Positions 34,398 to 55,100 of a stretch of DNA of 64,000 nucleotides are shown piece after piece. Numbering within the stretch: position 1 is the first letter of the stretch; each line of letters opens with the position of its first letter. Made by a program: the position numbers and the translations under genes. This DNA comes from Mytilus edulis (lineage: Eukaryota): positions 31,558,001 to 31,622,000 of the forward strand of contig NC_092349.1 in the NCBI RefSeq assembly GCF_963676685.1. The letters run 5' to 3'. The notes under the pieces were generated by a model that had not been told where the DNA came from, did not search any database, and was given only the letters and a program-made list of their open reading frames with translations.

Positions 34398-37300
34398 ATG
34401 AACGCATGCAAAATAATCGCTGTTCTGATTTTGTATTCAATACAACAATCACAGAGTGCCAATATTGGATGGCCCGTGAAATGCAAGGGTAGGATCATTT
34501 TTTAACATCTGTTATTTCATTAGTTTAAAATTGCATGACAAAAATTGGTTTTAATACTTACCAACATCATTGTTTAAGTTTTAAATTGAAATAGCAGAAA
34601 CCACATAATAATTCAACAAAGAAAGTTTTACACGTTTTATTAAGCATTGTGCATTGGCGTTTTTTCTCATTTATGATTAACATATCTCTACCTACCAGAT
34701 TCCGACAGATACCATTACCAAGGTCACGAAATGACCGAAGCATAGAGATGTACAAAATTATCCTAGTTCCGTCAATCTGTATTTCCATCCACAATAAAGG
34801 TGATCTTCGGAATTTATCGTTATGCCTACAGAAATGAGTCTAATTTTGGTACATAAACATACGTCAAAGATTTAAAGTATGACTTATGCTTTCTCATCGA
34901 ATTCTGATTCCTATGCAGAATTATGGCCCTCAAGAATTATCGCAGTTAAAAAAAAAAAATTTTTTAGGCAAAATAATGAATTAATGGTATCAACTCTTTT
35001 AATTTTGTACTTTTAGTGAATTTTATCTTATGCTTGATGATCTGGAGCTGATTTCAATACATCATTGTAAGATAATGACTCACATACAAAATAAGATTTT
35101 TTCTTGTTGACCGACTTTTCATTGGATTGCGCACATTGATTAAGAAAGTTCACGAGAAATCCTCTTGTATTGACAAATTTGCTTGCGTGTCTTAATTGTT
35201 AGATTATCAATGTATAACATTAATGAATTGATAAATTCACTGTGTCCCGACCCGATGTTAGTAATAAAATTGACGGAACAATTGAACCATACGCGGATAT
35301 TGGCTATTCAGTGATGTTCTGGGCAAAAATATGTGAAAAACAAAAGCTTATTTTAAACCAAAGAGTAGAACGGTTAACACATTCGGTCAAGCTGTCTGAG
35401 CTTTACATTAGCGGGATATTACTGATAATATACCAATATATTTATATCATGCCAATTTCAAAGCACAGGATACTTTAATGGTGATAATCTCGAGGACTAA
35501 CTGTCAACCAGTAAAGATTTTCGACCCAGTAAAAATAATAACATTCATTCAACAATAACAATTTACAACTCCAGTTGTGCATTTTGACAATATGTCAGTG
35601 ATGCTCAAGGCCAAAATGTAAAAAAAAAAAAAAAAAAAAAAACACAATTCTTCTCATTCTTATCATGAAAGCTAATTATGAACAAAAAGGGACAAAATTA
35701 TAGCCAAAGACGGACAATGATTTGGAACTTTTCACAAGAACGATAAATCCTTCATGCCTTATGTGACAGAAAGATAGTTTTTTATTTTTTCTAAATAAAT
35801 CAAATTTTCAAATAAATACCGCTATGTCATTAAATATCAAGTCCAACTATTTCGTTGCATCCTTGTTAAAAGTCAATATGTATAATACACAGGATAAGTC
35901 CAAAATATAATACAGCCAAGTTTTGTATTTGTTACATCTTAAAATAAATTGATTGACGGATAATTATACCTAAAACGATCACTATAGCAATATGACATTT
36001 AAATTCCTATCATAAGCAATTCTGTGTTGACTTGAGTTATCATTGATATATTCATAATTATAAATTAACTGTTAACAACACTTTGAATTTTTGAAATACT
36101 AAGGCTTGTGTACCCCAGGAATAGATTACATCAGCTGTTTTTGTGAAAACGTTTAGAAAATTTTAATCCTCAATGCCCTTCAACTTCATATTTTGTTTGG
36201 CTATTTAGCATTTTTTCATTCAAGCATGACTGATGAGTCTGTTGTATACGAACCGTGTGTCTGGCGAAAATATAAAACTTCAATCCTGGTATATCTGATG
36301 AGTTTATTTTCTGAACCTTTTGATATTTAACGAAATATAGAATTATCCTGGTACATTAATTGAAAAAAAAATCGGTCTTCTGAATTTAATTTAAAAAAAC
36401 CGCAACGAGCTTGACTCAGAGGAAACTTTTAGTTAACTAGTTTATGTCTAGTTGGTATAGTTCGTGTCGCTCAGTCCTTAGTTTTTTATGCTGTGTGTAC
36501 TATCATTTGTTTTGTCTTTTTTGTAAGCCATGGCGTTGTCAGTTTATTTCGATCAGTGAGTTTGAATGTAACTCTGTTATCTTTCGCCCCCCTTTTTATC
36601 TCATTAAAGTACGTTAAAGTCAATTAAAACCCTATGTTAACAATTTTCATTTTTCTCGATTGTTAAAGTCATAAGAAACCTCAAATTAAAAAAAAATAAT
36701 GCACATGTTTTTTATGACTCAATGGATAGTTTTCATTATAAAACTTATTTACATATACTTTTTTCTGAAGAAAGAAGTTTACTTTATTTTGATTGCTTCC
36801 TCTCTTCCAGGAAGCAATCTCCCTACATATTTTGCGTATGCAAAGTGACCTCAGCATGACCCATCTCGTAAAAATCCGGTTATCGCAATACGCATGTGTG
36901 TCCTTAAAATAAACTATTATCTGATTGTACATGCATGTTGTTAAACACGTACTCAATAGCCATGCTTTTTATTAATTGTTGACAAACAGATGACAATCGT
37001 TAAACTTCGGCTTCAAAACACGAAATTTATCTGCCATATTTTCACAACAACACTGACCGATTGAAAAAAAAAGTTGACGATTATACGAAATTTATGCGAA
37101 AAAATTTATAAAATCGTGCAAAGAAGACTAAGTTTATGATGTTTGTATGCATTGGTTCAAGATTTTCGTTTATTATGACTTTAAAAATCCATTTTTTTGG
37201 TAAGCGAGTACATTATTTTCAGAAAGCCTGTTTTAAACTAATAAGTATTGATAATTGATCTCGACGAAAATCAAAAATCCAATTTTGTCATTGTATTTTC

Positions 37301-40300
37301 GATCCATATTAATACACACACCGTAAACACAAATATAAAGAATTTTTATAATTGATATATATTTTTGAACATGTAGAATATCTATGTAAACAATCAATAT
37401 AGAAATATGACTGTTATTTTTTTTTTCTACATCTGTCACGAAACTTTTTGATGTGAAACGAAGTATTAAGATATCCTGGTTCATTTATTTGCAGATATTT
37501 TGTCAAGATGTGCGCATGCAAACAATTTTTTCCTGTAATTTTTTATTCAATTCAACAATTGAAGAATCACATATGTATGGTTTTCTAACCTTTTTTCAAA
37601 TTTCTGTTGTTCTGTATATGCAAGGAAAAATGAAATATAAATATTTTTTCTGGAGGTATTTAGAAAAGACTGACGTTGTATTTTATTAAACACCTCGTTT
37701 GTCTAAGTGTATATGGTTTAGGATGTTCAGGATGTTGCGCGTCCAATACCTTACCTTTTCATTTTCTATTTTGAGAAATGTGGGCTGTTGGCAGATCTTA
37801 GTTTGTGTCTGTTAATTTAAAAATCGAAAACTCGGGATTACTTTGGGGTTGATATACTATATAGCTCCATGTGTATTGTTAAATACTTCTTTGCTGTTGT
37901 TGTGTTGATATATACTCTACATGTATTACTTTACAGATATTACCACTTATCCTCTTACTTACTTTTCATACTTATCTATTAACAATGCACAGAACCATTA
38001 TCACACAGATCTCACACAGAACATATACTTTATGCTATGAATGCAAATGTACCTTTACTGACATTTTTCAGGCGCAATGGATTGTGATGTTTGTCCTCCA
38101 CCTGGCATTGGTTTATGTGTAGAACTTGGTGGTTGTCCGACTGGACAACTACTATGTTTTAACGGATGTGGACATACATGTTTCCATCCTGTAAAGGGTA
38201 AGTTTTGAATTCTTAACCATTTAAAACACCCAAATATACTGAGTGCCAATGAAAACGCAACACTTTTGTTTTTCCAAAAAATCTTATAATTTTTATTTTA
38301 TTTATATTAGAACTTTGTATAGTTGGTTGAAAATGACTTTTAAGACAATTTTCGACAACTTTACGGTTGAGTGATTTTTGGAACAAATGCGAAGTAAGGG
38401 TTATTTTGAAAGAACAAAAACCGAGTTCACCGCTTTTCAACATACGCACCATTTTCACGATTTTGTCATTTAAAGCTTGGCTAATGTCATGAATTTTCCT
38501 GCCCTTATTGTTAGGAAACTGCAATAAACAGCTGAGTAAATGACAGGACTTTCCGACAACCAGCGACATGCAGTTTTGGGCATGATCCAATGAAGCCTTT
38601 CACAGTATACAATTACGGGAAGACTGAAGTTGTAGCCTCTACAATAACCCAAAACATCCACAAATTCAACCAAAATGGATCATTTAATGATAAGCCACAT
38701 CCCGGGGTACAAAAAGCAAGAAACGCTCAGCAAGACCGATACATTTGGTCTTTCACATATCCGATATCGACTATGATGGCTGTCCAAATGTCAAAGAGTT
38801 CAATAGTGGCCACGGTACAACCTTTGGAGCCATTCAGTTAAAAGCACTATTTGCGCAGAAATTGTTTAAGAGCACCACAGTCTTTCCTTAGTGACATTTA
38901 AACGGCCGTCTGGCGTAAATATCGAATTCTGTAGACCAAAAAGCATTCATTATGTACAAAAAACGTCAATGGTGGTTACATAGACATTTGGCACCCGCCT
39001 TGGCTAAAAGTCATGCTTTTCGCCGGATTTTGGTCCGATCGACCAAATTTTGCATCAGATTTGACATGTTTTAGACGATGAAAACCACCTCCAATATCAT
39101 AAAGTCAGCTTGCGTTTGCTTTGCGGGACAAGTGGAATAACATTCCTCGGGATCACATTAAACGTCCGGGATGATCAATTCCACGGCGCTGTCGAGATTG
39201 CGCTGCACCACGGGAATGTAACATTTTTTGTTAGGACTGTTAGTTGATGATTCGACATTGGATGTTTCGTTTACCTATTGCGCCCGAAAGATGACAATAA
39301 AACATTTTTGTTTGATATCGATCTATTGTTAAAATAGCTAATTTTCAAGAACAATTTATTTTGAGAGATTATCATTTCTTATATAAATTTTATTTTTGAA
39401 AAACCAAGTGTAGCGTTTTCATTGGCACTCAGTATATTTCCATCATTCACAAGGAGTAAAAGTACAAGAGGAAAACTTTTAACATCGTAGTAAATGAGAA
39501 AACAATAAGATAACAAGAGTACAATACCTAGCAAGATGTTAAAAATAGTATATGTTTTTATACTTGTTCACATAAATAAACTTATCATAGATACCTGGAT
39601 TAAAATTTTATATTTACGCTCGATGCGCGTTTCGTCTACAAAAGAGTACTTCAATCAGTGACGCTCGAATAAAAAAATGTTAAAAAGGCCAAATAAAATA
39701 CGAAGTAAAGAGGACCAAAAGTTCCTAAAAATTTTGCAAAATACAGCTAAAGTTATCTATTCCTGAGGTAGAAAAGCCTTAGTATTTAAAAAAAATCAAA
39801 GTTTTGTTAACAGTTAATTTATGAGAATGAACATATCAATTGTAACTCAAGTCAACACATAAGTGCTGACTACTGGGCTGGTGATACCTTACATAAAGTT
39901 AAGTCCATAGCTATTAATTATGGATTCCCCCGAACAATTATAACATTTCAAAAAGAAAAATGATCAAAAATACCTTACTAGTATTTACAGATGACAAGAG
40001 ATCAAAGTTACTACACAAAAAGAAATGTCGAAAACAGTATACCAAAAATAAATAGATATATAATTTCTTGATTTTCTTAAATATCTCAAAATTCATATGA
40101 AATCTGTGCAAGAAACTAAGATGATGGGTGAATAAAAAATGAATTTCTGAATACAATTATTCAATGCCTTGTGAAAACTATTATTCTCGAAACTATGTTA
40201 ACCGTACTGCCAAACCATCAATTGTAAATTTTCAAACTTTGTTTTTATTCCAAATCCTTTTATATTCACTTGATAGTAGCAACTTGGGTAAATAAAACAT

Positions 40301-44100: not shown

Positions 44101-44521
44101 CGTCTGTCCCCGATATACACACCGAAATTGGTTGTATCGCTAACGTCTAATGTAGTTCTTCTCTTCCGCAATAAATTAATCATCATGCCTCTGTGTCCTA
44201 TATAGGTATCATTCATAATCGCAATTGTCATCCATTCTTATTATTATTCAGTTTGTGTTCAATTGGGAGAAAAACGAAAAAAGGTATTTTTTCCGTCATC
44301 AGACCGACTTTTAAGTCATGGACAAGACTTCTGGGTTTTAAACTTTTAAACATAATTTTCATAATTACTCGGGAATAGGACAATTATTTTCGCGTTATTC
44401 TGCATGTATGCAAACTCTCTATATAATAAAGCAGTGATCGCCGTGGAGAAGAAACTTTGAATTGATAGTTCATAGCAAATACACTTTATTTATAATATAC
44501 GTATGTTATTAGTATCATGAG

Positions 44522-45095
44522 TGTAAAGATTGTTGCCAATCTTTAATTTAAAACAATATCTTTGGTTTCTGGATATTAAATAATGACTAAACAACTTTTA
44601 AAAGTATCAGAGATTATTATTATCAATAATAATAAATACAGGTAAATGAAATACAATATGTTAAAACGTTTGAATGTGTTTTTCGTGTATGCGTTATTAC
44701 CTCTTGTATTCTTTCAAGCTTGGTTCAAATGCGTTTCGTTATCAGAAAAATCCGGTTTTTATAATACTTAGCACGCCTTATCCTTGCGTGTAAGAATATA
44801 GTCCGTTGCCGGTCAAGGTTAAATCATGTAAATAACTGTCAGTACGTACATACATATGAATTATAAAGAAAGCAAGCATAATTTCGTACGTCTCGACACC
44901 GATTCAACGATATAAAGCATGTAAATACAAGTAACTAAAAAAATGTAGGATTCATAACAAGCTAGAAAACAAAGATGTTATTCGAACGCCACATGTTGGC
45001 GGAATTTCGTAACGTTAAATCGGCAACTGTCAAATTTGCCGGGAACGTGTTACGTTTACAAAAAGGTACTGCCGCGATATTTAACGTTCACAACA
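44522..45095 (-). repeat. 3' LTR
   Basis: Direct repeat of 49386-49702 + 51268-51525 with only about 4-5 differences seen by eye. Confidence 0.92.
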
Positions 45096-45355
45096 CTGCC
45101 CTCCGTCAAAATAGAATTTCGTCTCGAAATTTAAACAACTACGAAATATTAAATCAATTTATACAATCAAACAAAGTCAAGTTAAACAAGCACCTGCTGC
45201 TGAATATTAAAATTAAGAAAATTTGGTTTTTTTTTCTAAATCACGAATAACCTTATATCACGATTCATGACACGTGTAATGGTAAAATTGTACCAACGGC
45301 ATACAAAACAATATACATATAAATAATGTCAACAAATTTCTGAATTTGTGTCTTT

Positions 45356-46501
45356 TCAGTATAATAAATCTTGTAATGTATCTTGTGTTCTTTCTCCTTC
45401 TGTATCCTCTACTGCTCTTTTCTTCCTTTTTCTCCAATCTTTTCGTGTGTCTTGAGTTACATGTTTTTCATTCTCAAGTTCTTTCTGAGTTTGGTTTAAA
45501 TCTGTGTTACGGAACCTATCTTTCAGTTGACTATTTTTTTCCTTCTGACAGAACTGGTTTCCGTCTTCTTCTGTAACAGGAACATTTTCATCTGTAACAC
45601 TTAAATTATCTTCTGTAACATGTTGCAAAAGTTCAGGCAACATTTGGACATCGACCTTGTCCGTCTGATTACCCTTATAACTTGCACTTGTAATATTTCC
45701 TATATATTCACACATGTCTTGCGTACTTGCTACCATGGGTTCTCTGTCATCTGCCATTACCGGCTCTTCTATTGAATCTCTGGTTGACAGGAACTCACTT
45801 CTTTCCGCTTCTTTGTAAATGACTAGCCCAGAATTGGTGTCCTTTTCTCCGACTCTGGCTACTTTCATTTCATCAATTAGGTCACATCCTAATAACATGT
45901 TCTCTTCAATGGGCGCTACATGAACTGGCCATTTGAATGTTTCACTCCTCAGATTAACTTTCACCTCTGTAATCCCTTCTGTTGTCAAGTTCTTTCCGGC
46001 CTCAGCAACTTCTAATTTTCTTGCTGCTCTCCTTAGTTTTGGCCGTTTACTTTCAGGAATCTGATCATACAACTTCTCACTTAGAACAGTCACCTCCGCT
46101 CCAGTGTCAATAACTGTATTCATCACAATCTTGTTAATGACCACTGGAACTGCAATGCTAGCTGCTGTCACCCGATCAATGATAACATTCTCTTCTATCC
46201 TGCTGGTCGTTTCTGCACTACCCATTACCTCCTTTGGTGTGTTCTCTGGTGTGTTCTGTTGTATCTCCTTACACTCCTCAAACAACATCTCTAGGCTTAA
46301 ATCTAGGTCCTGTATATCTAGGCTATCTTCTTCAAATGATCTCTTTATAGAAACTGTACCCACTGATGTTTTCGGTTCAACCAAATGCTCTTTCATTTGA
46401 CAAGGTTTCTCTTCATCTTTTAAATTATTCTCTTTAACTATTTCTTTATTATGTTTAGGGGCTGACACTTGGTCGATAGTCTCAACCCTTAGCAGTTTAA
46501 A
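45356..46501 (-). CDS. Retropepsin-like aspartic protease ORF (-1 frame to gag) fused to a low-complexity acidic tail
   Basis: VIDTGAEVTVLS and MLLGCDLI motifs; the frame is open back to the TTTAAAC slippery site. Confidence 0.8.
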   Translation of the reverse strand, partial: FKLLRVETIDQVSAPKHNKEIVKENNLKDEEKPCQMKEHLVEPKTSVGTVSIKRSFEEDSLDIQDLDLSLEMLFEECKEIQQNTPENTPKEVMGSAETTSRIEENVIIDRVTAASIAVPVVINKIVMNTVIDTGAEVTVLSEKLYDQIPESKRPKLRRAARKLEVAEAGKNLTTEGITEVKVNLRSETFKWPVHVAPIEENMLLGCDLIDEMKVARVGEKDTNSGLVIYKEAERSEFLSTRDSIEEPVMADDREPMVASTQDMCEYIGNITSASYKGNQTDKVDVQMLPELLQHVTEDNLSVTDENVPVTEEDGNQFCQKEKNSQLKDRFRNTDLNQTQKELENEKHVTQDTRKDWRKRKKRAVEDTEGERTQDTLQDLLY

Positions 46502-48284
46502 GACTCTTCAGTTTGGTTTTGACTCCTTTCATCATTCCTTATAAAACCACTTCTGTTTTCTTTATGATAGGGGCTTCTCTTTTCTTTTGGACAATCTCTT
46601 ATGTAATGGCCATCCTCATTACAGTTAAAACATCTGCGATTCTTCATCTTGGTCGTATGGTCTCTATACACTTGCTTATTATGCCATGCACTACTGTCAT
46701 AATCTTGTGGTGCATTATACTTTGCCATTTCTGTTTGAATAACTTTCTCTAGTGACTGGGCGATGGACTGGGTGATGGAGTTTTTCATCCCTCTTTCAAA
46801 TTGTGTAAGCCTCTCCTCAGTTACATATCTTTTCCCACCAACTTTCCTTATTTCAATATCATCTTCACCTTCATCTAAATCAACAGTTTCTTGCATATTC
46901 AGCTGACGGATCTTTTATATGTTTCATATAAAGTCACCTGGTGGATAGCTTCAGTCATACTGGTAATCCTCTTTGTCAGTAATTCTATAGCAATGCTCTG
47001 GTCGGACAATCCTCTCAACATGTACTCCACACTCAATGTACTGTGAGTGGCTACGTCAATAGTAGGAAATGACCGTCTGACTAGCATTTCTACTCTGGAA
47101 GCATATTCATGGATGTTTTCTTTGCCCTGTTTCCTTAATGTGTGCAATTCTTGTCTATATGTCTCTGGATAACCATGGTCACCAAATATATTCGACATAG
47201 CTGCAAATAGCCCAAAGAAAGATCTTTTGGTCTCTGGTGAGAGGTAGGAAGCATAAACCATTGCCTCATCTTTCAGTGCGGTTACTAATTCAATGGCTTT
47301 AGTATAAGAATCCCATCTGTTGATCTCTGCAATAAGTTCAAATTACATAAAATAGGCATTCCAGGGATCTCTGCCGTTGTAAAATGGCACTCTGTTTCTT
47401 CTCCCATTGTCTATATTGGAGTTTTCATAATTATGGTGCTGTTGCTGTGGTCTGCCATACTGTTGCCTAGGTAACCAGTTTGGTACTGAGGAATTGTTTG
47501 GATACTGCTGGTAGTCTGGACGTTGCTGGATTTCAGGCATGACTGTACTCGTACAAGAATAGTTTGGACGATGCTGGATCTCAGGTATTGTCGTATTTGC
47601 ATAGACATATGATGGTTATTGCTGGGTCTCTGACAATGTTGTATCCATGTATGTGTGTGTAGAACGTTGCAGGGTGTCTGGCAATGTTGTGTTATTATAG
47701 GAGTAGGTTGGACGTTGCTGGGTCTCTGGCAATGTTATACTATTGCAGGAGTTTGTGGAACGTTGCTGGGTCTCTGACAATCTTATATTATGACAGGAGT
47801 TTGTTGAACGTTGCTGGGTTTCATAACTATTTTGACTGCTGATAACAGGGTCAGATTTCATCTGAGGGAAATATTGAGCATTGTTTTTCATCTGAAGGTT
47901 TTCATTTCTTAATGCCTCTATTTCTTGTCTCATCTGTATTTTTTCATCACTCTCACATGATTTGTCTTTTGTTATAGTCGCTCTTGCACTATCACTCTTA
48001 CTTTGAGTTGGGAAAAGAAATGGGTTTGTGCTTACTTCTCTTTGAATATTATTCGCAGTTCTACTAAATGGCATGGGGCTTGTATTTATCTCCTTCTGGT
48101 TTAAACTAATAGCCTGGTTTGAGGCTAAATAATTATGAGAAGTGACATCACCAAATGAGCAGGTATCAATATTTATAGATGCAACAGACCAAGTGGGAAT
48201 GATTGGACTAGCTAATGTGGTAATTCCCCTACTTAGTGAATTGGACCCCTGTGGTATACGAGATCTGTCTCTTGAATTATACAT
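46489..48284 (-). pseudogene. gag: gag, with 20-aa N-terminal repeats, capsid-like region and CCHC zinc knuckle
   Basis: ORF pieces 47616-48284, 47343-47540 and 46899-47261 are one frame broken by TAA stops. Frameshift near 46900-46915; CFNCNEDGHYIRDC. Confidence 0.8.
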
Positions 48285-48329
48285 TTTACTTTTAATTGCT
48301 AAATGGAATCAAGAGTTTCAATTTACTAA

Positions 48330-49139
48330 TCAACTTGGATTAAACTTTATCCTTGTTAATCTTGTACTTTTTCAGAATTATTCAACTTAGATTACTTTTT
48401 ATCCTTGTTGAAATCCGAAAAGAATTTCCTATGTCTTACTTATTTGTGAAATAGACTATATAAATAACAAATTTGAAAATAGACTATAAATTTTTCAACT
48501 TTGACCTTATCCAAATATTATTATATCTACAACTTAGATTTATATTTATCCTTGTTGTACAAAAGAAACTTTTGAAATAGACTTTAATTTACAACTTTGA
48601 AATAGACTATAGTTTTTACAACTGGACCCTATTGAAAAATTATGGTCTAATACTTAACTTGGATTCAGATTTATCCTTGTTAAAAATAGACTCCTAAATT
48701 TAAACTCAACTTGGATTAAAATGTATCCTGGTTGAATATGGCATTTACTTTAATATATTTAAACTTTCAACTTAGATTAAAATTTATCTCTGTTGAATTG
48801 TACCCTTAACTATTTTCAACTTGGATTTATATTTATCCTTGTTGATATATATTCTAACTAACTATATTATCACTTTTCAACTTGGATTAGAATTTATCCT
48901 TGTTGAATTTTAAATTATAACCTTTTCAACTTGGATTAGATTTTATCCTTGTTGATATAGATTCTGACTAACTAATATAGTTTTCCTTTTCAGCTTGGAT
49001 TTGAATTTATCCTTGTTGATATAGAATTTAACTAACTATATAATTACTTTTCAACTTGGATTAAAATTTATCCTTGATGATATCTCTGAAATTCAATAAC
49101 TATTTTATTTCAACTTGGATTAGAATTTATCCTTGTTGA
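48330..49139 (-). repeat. Array of ~12 conserved 30-nt hairpin repeats with variable spacers in the retroelement leader
   Basis: + strand consensus TCAAC-TT-GGAT-N8-ATCC-TT-GTTGA at ~48330, 48382, 48529, 48654, 48706, 48767, 48816, 48877, 48926, 48990, 49051, 49110. Confidence 0.9.
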
Positions 49140-49373
49140 ATTTAAAATTACTTAAATATATACTCTAATCTAATTTATATTCACCAACTGTACTATCTAT
49201 TTCTTTCAGCTTTCGTTGAAGTGTCTTTTTTTTATGTTCAGTTTTTTTTTTTTTTTATATGTAACCAAATATCATAACATATGGACAGAAATAATGTATG
49301 TACTTAGCAGTTGCGTGCCTAATAAAATATTCACGTAAGTTCTTAAAATTTTCTTAAAAAAGAAAACTAAATT

Positions 49374-49384
49374 CGCTGCCACCA
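49374..49384 (-). promoter_or_regulatory. Primer-binding site TGGTGGCAGCG (tRNA-Leu-like 3' end)
   Basis: Starts 1 nt inside the 5' LTR boundary; complementary to ..CGCUGCCACCA. Confidence 0.75.
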
Positions 49385-49385
49385 G

Positions 49386-51525
49386 TGTAAAGATTGTTGC
49401 CAATCTTTAATTTAAAACAATATCTTTGGTTTCTGGATATTAAATAATGACTAAACAACTTTTAAAAGTATCAGAGATTATTATTATCAATAATAATAAA
49501 TACAGGTAAATGAAATACAATATGTTAAAACGTTTGAATGTGTTTTTCGTGTATGCGTTATTACCTCTTGTATTCTTTCAAGCTTGGTTCAAATTCGTTT
49601 CGTTATCAGAAAAATCCGGTTTTTATAATACTTAGCACGCCTTATCCTTGCGTGTAAGAATATAGTCCGTTGCCGGTCAAGGTTAAATCATGTAAATAAC
49701 TGCAAGGCCGTAGCTACCCTTGAGGCAAGTGAGGCAAATGCCTCACTAAAATTTCGACACTGATTATTTTTTTTTATCAATATAATAGTCATTTGTTGTT
49801 CTGTCTCAACCTTAATTTCTATATAACTTGTCATCATTCCTTTTAAACTATTCTTCCTGGATATAACTCAGCATCTCAGCGGGTGATGTTTCTCGATAAC
49901 ATTAACCTAGTAATGATAATCATCATGGATCTCTAGTTAAAAACAGGCTCTTGCAGAAATGGAAAAGCGACACTGAAGGTAAAGAAGGAATAATTCTAGT
50001 AAACTAGTTTTTTTGTGAACAGAGTCTGAGTATTGCATATAACTTCATTAGAACAATCCAAAAACGATAAGTAGACTGACAAATCCAGTACTGGTCTTGG
50101 GAGGGGGAAGTCCTGTCTGCGTATGGATTTCTCCGTTTAACCAACTTTTGACAAATCAAGTCATCGCAAGGGGGCAGTCCTGTCTGCGTATTCATTTCAC
50201 GAACTTTCTTTTCAGATAAATACAATATAAATAATATGAAACATGCATGGATTAGTTTCTATCCATGTTTCTTTAACCTTAAAAATTGAAAGAATATCCC
50301 ATATTCCAATTTGATATTATTGAGGAATGGTAGAACCTTTAACACAGGATTTTGTCTTTACTTATTCAGGCGGGACTACGGAATTTCGTTTCTTTATATT
50401 CGGGGTTTCGGAATCGGACACCCCATACCCCTAACCCCTAAATTTATAGATTCTGGAACTAAAATACCACCAACTATTTCCAGAAATAATTTGAAATTAT
50501 GGACCTACATGTAAACGTCAAAAACTCCATTCCAATTTCCCTGTACCCATATCATATATACTCTATAGATAGAATCCTATACATGTATCTTATCTCATTC
50601 TATCCCTAGTTTGTCTACTCTTTGTCAGCATAAAAGCGAGTTTAATATTTTGTAACTGCAACTGTATGATGGTGCTTAGAGCAAAACTTAATTCCCTTTT
50701 GCAAACAAAACTGTTACTACCGATGCTACTACCAAATTGCCTATGGAGAAGGAATTGGAAGAAGACATTGATCATTGTGTTGATGATAATGTGCTTCCTT
50801 TAGAAACACAGACTGCCCTGAAACGACTGAAAACTTGGAAAAGAGCATGCATGAGTGGCGAGAGATTGTGCGGGCTTGCCATGTTCATCGCGATAAGGAT
50901 ATCAGCAGACCAAATTATGATTCTGAAACGATTTGACTGAACCGGCCATAGAAAAATTTGGCAAACTCTACTGAATCGATGTTTGTTCTATGCTATGGCA
51001 GCAGACTCAAATCAGTGACATTTGGATGATTATCTTACATATATAAATTTAAATAAAGTTGTTAAAAATTTGGTGTTAGTAAAAGTCTTAAAATAAAAAA
51101 AAAAATTATATAAAAAGTGTCCAAATTCAAAACATTATCAAAATGCCTAGAATGCAGGATTTTGCACCATTCATTTCATACCCTCCCAAAAATATTTTCG
51201 CCTCGCTTCGCTCGGCTCAATCATTTTGCCTCACCAAAATAAGATGCCTGCCTACGGCCTTGAACTGTCAGTACGTACATACATATGACTTATAAAGAAA
51301 GCAAGCATAATTTCGTACGTCTCGACACCGATTCAACGATATAAAGCATGTAAATACAAGTAACTAAAGAAATGTAGGATTCATAACAAGCTAGAAAACA
51401 AAGATGTTATTCGAACGCCACATGTTGGCGGAATTTCGTAACGTTAAATCGGCAACTGTCAAATTTGCCGGGAACGACGTTACGTTTACAAAAAGGTACT
51501 GCCGCGATATTTAACGTTCACAACA
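49386..51525 (-). repeat. 5' LTR, interrupted by a 1560-bp DNA transposon
   Basis: Matches the 3' LTR on both sides of the insertion. Confidence 0.9.
49703..51262 (+). mobile_element. Non-autonomous hAT-superfamily element with a 5-bp TSD (hAT5-like)
   Basis: TIR CAAGGCCGTAG plus subterminal GTGAGGCAAA; TSD AACTG (49698-49702, 51263-51267). Remnant ALKRLKTWKRACMSGERLCGLAM resembles the hAT dimerisation domain. Confidence 0.85.
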
Positions 51526-52195
51526 ATGATTATAAAGAAACGCCAAAATCATGGAATTTAACAGAAGAAGAAAAAATAACGGACTTTGGAAAAAAGGGAG
51601 AGGGCTTAAAATAAATGTCCTGTCTCCATATTCTATGACTTTACGTACCTTTTCTGAAATTCTCCAGACATAAAATCTTTTACAAAAATTCATCCTACAA
51701 CAGTTTACATACTTTCAACCAAGCTCTAAATGCCCGCGATTTCGCGGGTGTGTTCTAATATTATAGTTATAAATGACATTTCTTTATGGATCAAAAGTAT
51801 TTCAAGTTTGTCATTTAATACATATTATATTTAAACTACTAAATTATTTTACATGTATGTCTTTATCTCTGATATATATACTTCTTTACTTCTTTATCTC
51901 TATATATATACAGTCATAGTTAATTACCGTGCACAAATGGTGCAGTATATGTTTTTAATCTTTAGAATTTTCAGCCTTTTGTCGTCAAATTGTGTGCATT
52001 TTTTTCTTAACCATGATAAAAAAATAACCTGATAAATTAAAGATTAAAACTCAATGCTCATTTATGAACGTGTCAGATATCTTTTATTTAAAGATAATAC
52101 TTGTTATATTTCGTTTCACCTTTGGTATGCCGTAATAATGGGAGATAATCAGGCGAACATACAGGATCATATGGGTAAACAAAGACGGAGTTCAA

Positions 52196-55100
52196 ATGGC
52201 AGAGTTTAAATTAGACACAGGACAAACTTTAGAAGAAGGTATATTTTTTATACATTAAATAATTTAAGCAACGTTTAAATAATACATAAAAGTAAGAGCT
52301 GTTTGCGTTATATATATATTTAGATTTCTTCAAGGTAAATTTTCAAATGAGACAAGTACGGAAAGCAACTTCTGACTTATAACATTTGATGCGACCTATT
52401 GCAAATTGGGATTTCTGCATTACTTCTTTCATCGGAAAAGTTCGTCAAATATGCTCTCCTTAGTTTATCGTGTTTATAACATCACATACCAGAAGCATGA
52501 AGTAGATTCGTGACGAGTTTTTGTGAAAGTCATTGTGTAGAATCATCTAGAAATAATGTTCATGATGTTTCCCTAACGACTTTAGTGCAAATTAACAATT
52601 ATAAATATTCAATTGTAAGAATATGTCATGCAATACAGTATCTCAGCGTTTTATTTCTTTGTTAAAGGCAGTGGTCATATTCTACTGAAAGACATGCCAA
52701 GAAATCCTCGCTTAAAATTCCGGTCGACCTCCTACGGCAGTCATTAGTAGCTAAAGATTTGATTTCATTCAAGAAATTAATTTATGACCTTCATGTACGT
52801 GTCGCTGAGAACACGGTCATATACCAAATGGTCAATATTAATCATCCATGTAATTTGCTCTATGGGGTGTTTGCAGAATTTCAACGGATGCAATTTCTTG
52901 GCATGATGCTCACAGCATGGGCGTTGTTAACCTGTTTAATAACGAGCGTTAAAATGTTACTACATGTTTTTCATCATTATCAGAATACATATACTCTTTA
53001 ATTGGTATAATAAGGATTGACCTATACTATGATTACATTATGGGGAAAAGTAAGTTAAGGTTCATCATAACAAATTGACAAATGTGGCCGAATTTTAACT
53101 AAAAAATTCACTAGTACTCTGTGTGCAGACTTACCTGTGCAATTTGGAAAGTATTAAGGTCTAGCATCCACTAGATATATAAAAGTTAAATGTATTTTGC
53201 ATATCAGAAAGATGAATTTTTTTTTGGATTTTATTGGGCATTTTTTTCACTTCCTGTAGAAGGTGTAAAAATAAACTAAGTTGGGATATAACTTTTAGAT
53301 GCTCCCTCTCAGGTAAAAACTGGTTTGTCTTGTATTGATTGTCCTTGATACATATTATATTTAAACTACTTGGCATGGACAATAGATATCTTCACATTTA
53401 TAGTGAGTTAATCTGAGTGGACAGTATCAAAGTAATCCAGGTGTTTGTTTATTTTTACATCTTCTGCAGTAGGGAAAAAAAATGCCCATCAAAATCCAAA
53501 AACGATTTCATCTTTTGGGAGCATAAAAAGCATTTAACTTTCATATATCTAGTGGATGCCAGGCCTTAAAACTTTCCAAACTTCACAGGTAAGTTTGTAC
53601 ACTGAGTAGTTTTAGAGGTGAAAATACGGCCATATTTGTCCATTTATTGTGATGAACCTTAAATACGACCAACGCAATTCGTTGTAATATTCTTCTCTCT
53701 TAAGAAGTCTTTTAATACTACACTTTTCCTTTCAGATAATCCACCAACATCTAACAAATATTGTGGTCCATGTGAAACCAGACTTGTGACGACAGCGCCA
53801 CAGTATTGGTGTAACTCTTGTGAAGAAGGTTTGTGTGCAGAATGTTTCGAGCACCACAAAGCCATTAAGGCATCTAGAAGTCACATAACTGTAGATTTTA
53901 CAAAATTCATGAAACTTAAACCGTTTATATCAACTATCGACACGGAATGTAAGATCCATGACCTTCCATTTGAACTTTATTGCCCTAATCATGAAGCGAC
54001 TTGCTGCTCCTTTTGTGCAACTATGGATCATTCTACATGTTTAGGATTAAAATCTCTACCAAATGTTGTGGCATCATTTAGGGAGTCAGAATATCTAAAT
54101 TGTCTGGACGAGAGATTTGATGTTTTAGTAAATAATATCGACAAAGTAATCGAAAATCGTGAAAGAAATAAAGAAAAAATTAGTAATCAGTCTAAAAAAA
54201 GTCGATCAGATATACAAATTTTAAGAAAAGAAATCAATAAGCATTTAGATAATTTAGAGAGCCAACTTGCTACACAGAGTGACATAATTATTGAAGACGC
54301 AAATGAAAAACTTGAGAATTTCCTGCAGAGGTTAAAAGAAAAGAAACGCAACGTGAATGTTCTTAGGAACAACTTCTCAGAATTGAATAAAGGTGGATCT
54401 AATCTACAAGTATTTATATCCAGCAAGATGATAGATAACACACTTTCCGAATTAGATGAGACGTTGAACTCCGCAATGACAGAAGATAATATGTCAGAAT
54501 TGAATTTAAAATTTACGTTAGACCCCTACCTGAAAGATACAATCACTCAGCTTTTAGAAGTTCGTCTTCAGAAGAACAAACCTACCGTTATATTAGACTC
54601 ATCCACAAAACTCACTTGTCAAATTGTTTCAGAGGATGTTTACAAGATGACTGCAGTTCACAAAAGTAGTTTTGATAAATCCGCGTTCAATGAAACATCA
54701 AATATTACTTGTATTACTTCTTTGCTACCAGACGGAAAATTAGTAGTTGCCGATTATGGCTCTTCTTCGATATTGGTATTCAGTACAGAAGGAAGCATTG
54801 TCAAAACTGTTAGGTTTAAAAAGTCATCCCGGCTTTTTGGAGTAACATACGTTGTCAAAGATCGTATAGCGGTTTCCTTTCCAAGTAGCGAAAAAATTAA
54901 AATATTAGATACAATGGAATACAAGGAGTTGAAAGAAATACAATTAAACAAACCATGCTGGGGTATACATTCTGTAGATGACCTGATATATGTAGCAATC
55001 AGAAGCACTGAAATTTTAGTTCTAAATTTAGCAGGCAAAATTGTCAAAACTATACAAGCAAATCAACAGAACTTGATTTATTTGTGTTTATTCGAAGACC

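What the first reader, a model, noticed from the sequence alone, without database searches (positions are those of the whole stretch)
48330..49139. CRISPR-like repeat-spacer array of covarying RNA hairpins in a Gypsy leader
Seen: about 12 copies of a 30-nt unit lie between the PBS and the gag ATG. In the sense strand the unit is UCAAC-AA-GGAU-N8-AUCC-AA-GUUGA (5-bp stem, 2x2 A loop, 4-bp stem, fixed 8-nt loop). AT-rich spacers are mostly 19-34 nt and much more divergent than the unit. Stem changes are paired: TTAAC/GTTAA (48654), ACAAC/GTTGT (48529), AGAT/ATCT (48767). Single changes at 48330, 48382 and 48529 give G-U pairs only on the minus (element-sense) strand; two copies (48990, 49051) carry mismatches. 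Inference: selection on a repeated RNA structure, such as a multivalent Gag-binding or packaging signal, a dimerisation/export element, a translation-control module or a source of processed small RNAs, rather than a neutral minisatellite. I do not recall this motif being described, but cannot search.
Basis: partly seen in the sequence, partly recalled or inferred. Interest (0 to 1): 0.88.

Follow-up and report, generated by a model that had tools for sequence, protein, structure and literature searches.

The report
Selected RNA hairpin array in retrotransposon leader
Twelve copies of a small RNA hairpin sit between the primer-binding site and gag of a gag-protease-only LTR retroelement. They have been kept intact by selection while the spacers drifted. 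Related Gypsy-type families in the same genome carry their own hairpin arrays at the same place, so this looks like a natural multi-copy protein-docking signal on the element's RNA.

Summary
Twelve 30-nt units lie on the minus strand at exactly the stated coordinates. Each folds as a 5-bp stem, an AA/AA internal loop, a 4-bp stem and an 8-nt loop. About 17 family copies in this 1.37-Gb genome carry the array, and the motif occurs nowhere else in it.

A test with a neutral control shows selection. Variants private to one copy are equally dense in units and spacers. Variants shared by two or more copies are 0/216 in stem columns and 96/447 in spacer columns.

Three paired changes and three G-U changes are fixed in the family and break no pair. 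Private changes break 35 of 43 pairs. One-sided states are always G-U on the sense strand. The AA/AA loop is not palindromic, and ATG is depleted on the sense strand only. This favours sense RNA over double-stranded DNA.

Related Gypsy-type families have their own arrays just upstream of gag. One has the same architecture with different stems. Another has a 7-bp covarying stem and a conserved loop.

Function is inferred: a multivalent protein-binding platform, most likely for the element's own Gag (packaging).

The parts
44521..51525 (-). Whole LTR retroelement: LTR, leader, gag, protease, tail, LTR. It is flanked by a 4-bp target-site duplication TCAT (44517-44520 and 51526-51529).
   Evidence: Self-BLAST, comparison with other copies, junction read-out.
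44521..45095 (-). 3' LTR, about 575 bp, starting TGTTG and ending TTTACAC. It is preceded by a purine-rich tract GACGGAGGGCAG (45096-45107).
49385..49702 (-). 3' part of the 5' LTR, 99.7% identical to 44520-44838.
49703..51262 (.). A 1560-bp foreign insertion inside the 5' LTR, with terminal inverted repeats CAAGGCCGTAG and a 5-bp duplication CAGTT. It is not part of the hairpin system.
   Evidence: Other copies have the two LTR parts contiguous.
51263..51525 (-). 5' part of the 5' LTR, 98.5% identical to 44834-45095.
49373..49384 (-). PBS-like TGGTGGCAGCGA directly after the LTR end. The tRNA it matches was not identified.
49140..49372 (-). Leader before the array. It is well conserved between copies (0.059 shared variants per column) and contains a small UUCAAC-GAAA-GCUGAA hairpin at 49205-49220.
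49110..49139 (-). Hairpin unit 1, canonical: UCAAC-AA-GGAU-AAAUUCUA-AUCC-AA-GUUGA.
   Evidence: -9.4 kcal/mol.
49051..49080 (-). Hairpin unit 2. It has a private U.U mismatch at pair 4/27.
48990..49019 (-). Hairpin unit 3. It has a private A.C mismatch at pair 4/27.
48926..48955 (-). Hairpin unit 4.
48877..48906 (-). Hairpin unit 5, canonical.
48816..48845 (-). Hairpin unit 6, with loop AAAUAUAA.
48767..48796 (-). Hairpin unit 7. Pair 8/23 is A-U instead of G-C, a compensated change fixed in the family.
48706..48735 (-). Hairpin unit 8, with internal loop CA/AA.
48654..48683 (-). Hairpin unit 9. Pair 2/29 is U-A instead of C-G, a compensated change fixed in the family.
48529..48558 (-). Hairpin unit 10. 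Pair 1/30 is A-U instead of U-A (compensated), and pair 8/23 is G-U.
48382..48411 (-). Hairpin unit 11. Pair 8/23 is G-U, and the loop is AAAAAGUA.
48330..48359 (-). Hairpin unit 12. Pair 2/29 is U-G. The unit ends 45 nt before the gag ATG.
48449..48623 (-). A second repeated motif (sense UAUAGUCUAUUUC, 5 copies) in the two long spacers around unit 10. Its role is unknown.
   Evidence: (D4-D6).
46899..48284 (-). The gag frame, starting at ATG 48284. About 7 tandem 16-aa Q/S/T-rich repeats lie at 47619-47819, and Retrotrans_gag lies in 46899-47261. This copy has two in-frame stop codons.
46489..46896 (-). The gag zinc-knuckle (zf-CCHC) piece, in a different frame from the piece before it.
45356..46468 (-). 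Retroviral-type aspartyl protease ORF. No RT or integrase follows it.

Best explanation
The twelve units are hairpins of the element's sense RNA: a 5-6-bp stem, a 2x2 A.A internal loop, a 4-bp stem, and an 8-nt loop with fixed AAA..A edges. Selection in the transposing lineage has kept them. They act together as a multivalent docking platform for a sequence- and shape-specific protein.

The most likely partner is the element's own Gag. Under this reading the array is a high-avidity signal that selects the genomic RNA and nucleates particle assembly (a repeated packaging signal). It sits where retroviral packaging signals sit, between the PBS and the gag AUG.

Shown here:
- the units exist, fold, and are under purifying selection;
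- pairing is maintained through compensated and G-U changes;
- the signal is on the sense strand;
- sister families have their own arrays at the same place.

Inferred:
- that a protein binds;
- that the protein is Gag;
- that the outcome is packaging.

My odds are about 0.8 that this is a selected sense-strand RNA hairpin motif and about 0.4 that Gag binding or packaging is its job.
For: (1) Selection. Across 16 independent copies, private variants per column are equal in units and spacers (83/312 against 122/447, p=0.87). Shared variants are 0/216 in stems, 1/48 in AA/AA, 0/48 in loop edges, 12/48 in the loop middle and 96/447 in spacers (p=4e-23). In the unambiguously aligned 3' half the figures are 1/156 against 48/290 (p=6e-9).

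(2) Pairing. Three compensated pairs and three G-U states are fixed in the family, and no fixed change breaks a pair. Random placement of nine stem substitutions leaves no broken pair with P=3e-4. Private changes break 35 of 43 pairs (Fisher p=2e-4).

(3) Strand. Every one-sided state that is fixed or recurrent, in this family and in the two sister families, is G-U on the sense strand and would be A.C on the other. That is 8 pair positions against 0. Private transitions are 6 G-U to 9 A.C. The internal loop is AA on both arms of the same strand, so it is not a DNA palindrome. ATG is the most depleted trinucleotide of the sense leader, 3 against 13 expected (P=0.0005), while the antisense has 11. 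The relA leader shows the same, 4 against 13.5.

(4) Recurrence. relA (L086 1155-1671) has 10 units in one copy, 16 pattern matches in a second copy, and 77 matches in the genome at 10 loci. Each unit is ACACC-AA-GAGUU-AUUGA-AAUUC-AA-GGUGU, the same 5bp/AA.AA/stem/loop design. Two outer pairs are exchanged relative to the window unit, and C-G, U-G and U-A variants occur within the family. relC (L088 1856-2225) has 8 units with a near-invariant loop, 100% pairing, and 3 pairs changed on both sides. Both arrays end 50-85 nt before a gag ORF.

(5) Context. Each family has its own hairpin and its own gag, as expected for cognate recognition. In the folded 1.1-kb leader, 9 of 12 hairpins have pair probability above 0.7 on the sense strand, against 6 of 12 on the antisense.
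Against: - No binding or packaging data exist.
- RNA-seq raw reads of two runs gave no read on 48416-49311, although depth on the rest of the element was only 1-7 reads. Transcription of the array is therefore not shown.
- The canonical unit has no unpaired G, which is the usual contact of retroviral zinc-knuckle nucleocapsids (my knowledge of HIV-1 and MLV).
- All covariation comes from comparing paralogous units and families inside one genome. No other species could be searched.
- Compensated changes could in part come from template switching within quasi-palindromes.
- relD has only three weak hairpins, and relB has no clear array.
Confidence: 0.4

Rival explanations
1. The hairpins are selected sense-RNA structures, but the partner is a host factor rather than Gag. 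The array would then serve nuclear export of the unspliced RNA, RNA localisation or stability, or control of gag translation.
For: The evidence for a selected RNA structure is the same as above. The conserved unpaired residues are adenines, not the guanines preferred by zinc knuckles. ATG depletion shows that the leader is shaped as a scanned 5' UTR. The arrays end 45-120 nt before the AUG in four families.
Against: The families use different hairpins: UGCAUUUAG-loop hairpins in relC against AA/AA hairpins in the window family and relA. This fits family-specific partners better than one host protein. Hairpins of -7 to -9 kcal/mol are too weak to block scanning.
Confidence: 0.25
2. The units are double-stranded DNA binding sites for a host or element protein. 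The array would be an enhancer or insulator in the 5' UTR, like the 12 Su(Hw) sites of Drosophila gypsy.
For: [quoted passage not shown] Partial palindromes are typical of dimeric DNA binders. The unpaired positions are as conserved as the stems.
Against: Compensated changes keep complementarity, not a half-site sequence. All one-sided states are G-U on one strand, 8 against 0. The AA/AA positions are strand-asymmetric in all units. Centre-to-centre spacings of 49-64 bp are not in helical phase.
Confidence: 0.1
3. The array is a functionless by-product. A hairpin stalls reverse transcriptase, template switching duplicates it into a minisatellite, and homogenisation keeps the units alike.
For: Tandem repeats in untranslated regions of LTR retrotransposons are common and have been ascribed to aberrant strand transfer (PMC7004042). 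The number of units varies between copies from 8 to 13. A 110-bp higher-order repeat shows recent duplication.
Against: Units 7-12 each keep their own diagnostic variants in nearly all copies, so they are not being homogenised. Even so they carry 1 shared variant in 156 constrained columns against 48 in 290 spacer columns, with equal private-variant input. The four middle loop bases inside the units drift like the spacers.
Confidence: 0.07
4. The hairpins act through RNA-RNA contacts, either as kissing loops that dimerise two genomes or as a source of processed small RNAs (the 'CRISPR-like' reading).
For: Some loops contain short self-complementary runs: AAUU, AAAUUU, AUAU, and UGCA in relC.
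Against: The middle of the loop drifts freely, and three of the six loop types have no self-complementary run. Stems of 9 bp with an internal loop are too short for Dicer-type processing (my knowledge). The spacers are recurring AT-rich types, not unique captured sequences. No small-RNA data could be examined.
Confidence: 0.05

Closest known systems
Su(Hw) binding-site array (gypsy insulator) in the 5' UTR of Drosophila gypsy
   Same: [quoted passage not shown]
   Different: The Su(Hw) sites are 12-bp, non-palindromic, double-stranded DNA sites read by a zinc-finger protein. Here the unit is a 30-nt hairpin with compensated and G-U changes on the sense strand and no sequence likeness to the Su(Hw) consensus.
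Retroviral packaging signals in the leader (HIV-1 leader with two dozen NC sites; the gammaretroviral pair of hairpins with conserved loops)
   Same: These are cis-acting structured RNAs between the PBS and gag that bind many copies of the nucleocapsid domain (PMC7395439). In gammaretroviruses, adjacent hairpins have conserved loops and covarying stems (my knowledge).
   Different: Those signals are single, non-repetitive multi-helix domains. Here one small hairpin is reiterated 8-16 times with spacers. No unpaired G is offered, and binding has not been tested.
Xist A-repeat and similar repeated-hairpin modules of long RNAs; engineered MS2/PP7 hairpin arrays; the multi-stem-loop packaging signal of alphaviruses (all from my knowledge)
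   Same: All show conserved short hairpin units separated by variable U/A-rich linkers. Several copies act together by recruiting many copies of one protein.
   Different: They occur in a different molecule, with different sequence and different partners. None lies in a retrotransposon leader.
Tandem repeats in untranslated regions of plant Tat/Ogre LTR retrotransposons
   Same: These are short tandem repeats inside the non-coding part of Ty3/gypsy elements, variable in copy number (PMC7004042).
   Different: They lie in the 3' UTR, are hypervariable and are regarded as by-products and seeds of satellites. Here the units are in the 5' leader and under purifying selection, and the motif is not amplified outside the elements.

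Membership tests
LTR retrotransposon of the Ty3/Gypsy kind | Two LTRs, a target-site duplication, a PBS after the 5' LTR and a purine tract before the 3' LTR. | tested here: met
   LTRs of about 575 bp, TCAT duplication, TGG-starting PBS and GACGGAGGGCAG tract.
LTR retrotransposon of the Ty3/Gypsy kind | A pol gene with the order protease, RT, RNase H, integrase. | tested here: not met
   The window copy and all ~17 leader-bearing copies end after the protease. One copy with the family LTR has protease then RVT_1 in one frame, and so does relA. This excludes the Copia order. Integrase position was not seen.
LTR retrotransposon of the Ty3/Gypsy kind | A gag gene with a retrotransposon capsid domain and a zinc knuckle. 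| tested here: met
   PF03732 (E=2e-4, just under Pfam's cut-off) and PF00098.
Any described RNA family (Rfam 15) | A match to a curated covariance model. | tested here: not met
   No match over 44400-49800 at E<=1, apart from a chance CRISPR-DR63 hit elsewhere (E=0.81, below threshold).
CRISPR array | Identical repeats with unique spacers of foreign origin, adjacent cas genes, and a prokaryotic host. | tested here: not met
   The spacers are recurring AT-rich types in a 110-bp higher-order repeat. The array lies inside a eukaryotic retroelement. No cas genes were looked for or expected.
Su(Hw)-type insulator array | Units match the YRYTGCATAYYY consensus and act as duplex DNA. | tested here: not met
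   The unit sequence is unrelated. The strand-specific G-U pattern argues against duplex recognition. Function on DNA is not testable here.
Retroviral/retrotransposon packaging signal | Located in the leader between the PBS and gag on the genomic RNA. | tested here: met
   The array spans 48330-49139, the PBS is at 49373-49384 and the gag ATG at 48284.
Retroviral/retrotransposon packaging signal | Bound by Gag/NC and needed for RNA incorporation into particles. | not testable with these tools
   This needs binding and packaging assays.
Neutral minisatellite | Units and spacers evolve at the same rate, with no constraint on pairing. | tested here: not met
   Shared variants are 1/312 in constrained unit columns against 96/447 in spacers, with equal private-variant density.

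The most novel reading that the evidence does not exclude
A clade of invertebrate Gypsy-type elements has evolved family-specific tandem hairpin arrays of 8-16 copies in the 5' leader. These act as multivalent, orthogonal Gag-recognition tags, a natural counterpart of MS2/PP7 arrays. The gag-protease-only family in this window uses its array to out-compete its RT-bearing helper for encapsidation.
Probability: 0.3. Interest if true: 0.8.

Novelty: new variant of a known kind. Interest (0 to 1): 0.6.

Why it matters
How Ty3/Gypsy Gag proteins pick their own RNA is poorly understood outside yeast. The same question applies to domesticated relatives such as Arc and PEG10.

A short hairpin with clear recognition features is an unusually simple system for binding and packaging assays. 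Those features are the AA/AA internal loop and the fixed loop edges. The hairpin is repeated a dozen times and is matched to a gag gene encoded right behind it.

Several families with different hairpins in one genome would give ready-made orthogonal RNA-protein pairs. They would also give a natural experiment on packaging specificity and on how non-autonomous elements parasitise helpers.

If instead a host factor binds, the arrays point to a host pathway (export, localisation or translation) that these elements exploit.

Tried and rejected
- **Rfam:** a scan of the element found nothing.
- **Covariance model:** model R1 was built from the 12 units and run on the whole genome. All 150 scored candidates fall in the known family loci.
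- **Metagenome scan:** a pattern scan gave two single chance matches that do not form the hairpin.
- **RNA reads:** two raw RNA-seq runs gave too few reads, and none on the array. This is no evidence either way. DNA contigs of two other organism labels hold near-identical copies and add no divergence.
- **L083:** the region upstream of the RT-bearing copy at C4:9.81 Mb has no array. That copy joins the LTR almost directly to the protease.
- **relB (L087):** it has only a 2-3-copy long repeat far from its ORF and is left unclassified.
- **Kissing-loop and CRISPR-like readings:** rejected on loop drift and spacer types.
- **Genome-letter allowance:** Later pattern hits came back without their letters, which limited the between-copy analysis of relA and relC.
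- **Earlier findings of the scan:** nothing on this place or theme.
- **Organism:** not identified, and 'mollusc' is untested.

Full report
**1. What is there**

Read on the minus strand, 48330-49139 holds twelve 30-nt units with the common form UCAAC-AA-GGAU-AAAUUNUA-AUCC-AA-GUUGA. A scan of the whole window finds these twelve and no others, and none on the plus strand. Tandem-repeat tools see the same array, with a 110-bp higher-order period made of two units and two spacer types.

Each unit folds alone as the proposed hairpin at -6.6 to -9.4 kcal/mol. About half of the units add a sixth U-A pair. In the folded 1.1-kb leader, 9 of 12 hairpins keep a pair probability above 0.7 on the sense strand, against 6 of 12 on the antisense.

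**2. The element**

The host element runs from 44521 to 51525 on the minus strand, between TCAT target duplications. The true LTR is about 575 bp. In this copy the 5' LTR is split by a 1560-bp insertion that has inverted ends and a 5-bp duplication.

After the LTR come these features:
- a TGG-starting PBS-like site;
- a 233-nt conserved stretch;
- the array, followed by 45 nt;
- the ATG of a frame that later contains Retrotrans_gag;
- a zinc knuckle;
- an aspartyl protease.

No RT or integrase follows, here or in any of the ~17 other copies with this leader. One copy with the same LTR carries protease plus RT but no leader or gag. The family is therefore a non-autonomous gag-protease derivative of a Gypsy-type lineage. 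In this copy gag has two in-frame stops and a frame change, which I only describe.

**3. Is the array more than a minisatellite?**

The motif occurs 114 times in the 1.37-Gb genome (at most one mismatch, reversed control 0). All listed places, and all 150 hits of a covariance model, lie in the family's leaders.

I aligned the leaders of 17 copies. I left out one member of a tandem pair and sorted variants into two classes. Private variants occur in one copy and are mostly decay after insertion. Shared variants occur in two or more copies and were inherited through transposing lineages.

| Column class | Private variants | Shared variants |
|---|---|---|
| Stems | 47/216 | 0/216 |
| AA/AA internal loop | 17/48 | 1/48 |
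| Loop edges | 19/48 | 0/48 |
| Four middle loop bases | 14/48 | 12/48 |
| Spacers | 122/447 | 96/447 |

Pooled over the constrained unit columns, private variants are 83/312 against 122/447 in spacers (p=0.87). Mutation input is therefore the same. The shared-variant contrast between constrained unit columns and spacers gives p=4e-23. The result holds in the 3' half, where orthology is unambiguous: 1/156 against 48/290, p=6e-9 (map).

This is purifying selection on 26 of the 30 positions, paired and unpaired alike.

**4. Pairing**

The variant units are old. Nearly all copies share the A-U at pair 8/23 of unit 7, the U-A at 2/29 of unit 9, and the A-U at 1/30 of unit 10. They also share the G-U states of units 10, 11 and 12.

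The family thus fixed nine stem substitutions without breaking a pair. Random placement achieves that with P=3e-4, and three compensated pairs arise with P=3.5e-5. On the window's own units, 4 pairs change on both sides against 0.8 in shuffles (0/500).

Private changes behave differently. Of 43 changed pairs, 35 are broken, with 6 G-U and 9 A.C among them. The contrast with fixed changes gives p=2e-4.

**5. RNA or DNA, and which strand**

- Every fixed or recurrent one-sided state is G-U on the element's sense strand and would be A.C on the other strand. Counting the sister families, this holds for 8 pair positions against 0 (sign test 0.004).
- The internal loop is AA on both arms of the same strand in all units, so the site is not a DNA palindrome.
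- ATG is the most depleted trinucleotide of the sense leader, 3 against 13 expected (P=0.0005), while the antisense has 11. The relA leader shows the same.

Together these points favour a sense-strand RNA that is also a scanned 5' UTR. Plus-strand single-stranded DNA cannot be excluded by sequence alone.

**6. Sister families**

Using the protease as a probe, I found Gypsy-type relatives at 36-48% protein identity.

- **relA** (L086/L077; protease and RT). It has ten 53-nt repeats ending about 85 nt before its gag. Each holds ACACC-AA-GAGUU-AUUGA-AAUUC-AA-GGUGU. This is the same design as the window unit (5-bp stem, AA/AA loop, inner stem, loop), at -9 to -11.5 kcal/mol. Compared with the window unit, the letters xCAxC-AA-G...C-AA-GxUGx are shared, and pairs 1/30 and 4/27 are exchanged on both sides. 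A second copy shows ACACU/AGUGU, GCAUC/GGUGU and G-C for G-U in the inner stem. The family has 77 pattern matches at 10 loci, with control 0.
- **relC** (L088; gag confirmed). It has eight hairpins with a 7-bp stem and a near-invariant loop, separated by A-rich spacers. They end about 55 nt before gag. Pairing is 100%, three pairs change on both sides, and 0/500 shuffles reach the score. There are 66 matches genome-wide, in clusters.
- **relD** (L089). It has three weak GUUGA-GAAG-UCAAC-type hairpins ending 117 nt before its gag ATG.
- **relB.** It is unclear.

Repeated small hairpins just upstream of gag are therefore a recurring trait of this group, and each family has its own sequence.

**7. 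What it most likely does**

The data fit a reiterated recognition site for a protein that reads both shape and specific unpaired adenines. The site is strongly constrained in paired and unpaired positions, and its middle loop and spacers drift freely. It sits in the leader just before gag, and each family has its own hairpin next to its own gag.

I favour the element's own Gag, meaning RNA selection and assembly nucleation, at about 0.4. A host RNA-binding factor for export, localisation or translation comes next, at about 0.25. Lower down are a duplex-DNA enhancer or insulator like the 12 Su(Hw) sites of Drosophila gypsy (PMC2374998; 0.1), a functionless by-product of template switching (0.07), and RNA-RNA or small-RNA roles (0.05).

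Several points count against Gag:
- the unit offers no unpaired G;
- nothing has been tested at the bench;
- RNA-seq gave no reads on the array, at very low overall depth.

**8. Known or new**

Rfam has no such family, and my paper searches found no description of hairpin arrays in retrotransposon leaders. The general kinds are known. They include repeated cis-elements in Gypsy 5' UTRs, structured packaging signals with many nucleocapsid sites (PMC7395439), and tandem repeats in LTR-retrotransposon UTRs (PMC7004042). I therefore rate this a new variant of a known kind.

**9. Limits**

All comparisons are between paralogues in one genome. Other animal genomes could not be searched. The organism was not identified. 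E-values of the home-made model are rough.

Noticed in passing
window 49703-51262: A 1560-bp element with terminal inverted repeats (CAAGGCCGTAG) and a 5-bp duplication (CAGTT) is inserted in the 5' LTR of the retroelement. It looks like a non-autonomous DNA transposon.
   Followed up: partly
window 44521-51525 and loci L002-L017, L053-L076: The whole family (~17 copies) encodes gag and protease only. Copies fall into two protease subtypes (about 90% and about 75% nucleotide identity to the window copy), while the flanking parts stay similar. This suggests recombinant subfamilies.
   Followed up: partly
G000:C1:28956880-28966987 (L004, L005, L055, L056): Two family elements lie in tandem and share the middle LTR (LTR-internal-LTR-internal-LTR).
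   Followed up: no
L070 (G000:C4:9809023-9812481): The family LTR is joined, within about 70 nt, to an open frame with protease and reverse transcriptase, without leader or gag. It is a possible remnant of the helper lineage.
   Followed up: partly
window 47619-47819: The N-terminal part of Gag holds about seven tandem 16-residue Q/S/T-rich repeats (48-bp DNA period). A repeated, probably disordered protein segment is thus encoded right behind a repeated RNA signal.
   Followed up: no
window 46787-47559: RNA reads of one run cover only this capsid-like piece and continue into constant unrelated sequence on both sides. Some other transcript or element seems to carry just this gag fragment.
   Followed up: no
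window 49205-49220: A small UUCAAC-GAAA-GCUGAA hairpin uses the same outer-stem letters as the units. It sits in the conserved leader before the array.
   Followed up: no
window 48449-48623: A second short motif (sense UAUAGUCUAUUUC) is repeated five times in the two long spacers around unit 10. The stretch between units 10 and 11 is well conserved between copies.
   Followed up: partly
L089 1164-1262; L087 (reverse strand) 266-556: relD has three weak GUUGA-GAAG-UCAAC-type hairpins ending 117 nt before its gag ATG. relB has a 2-3-copy long repeat with UUGG-CAAAUUU-CCAA, 1.3 kb before its ORF.
   Followed up: partly
window 36015-36316 / 39566-39867 and 53055-53279 / 53444-53662: Two pairs of inverted repeats of about 80% identity lie elsewhere in the window.
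   Followed up: no
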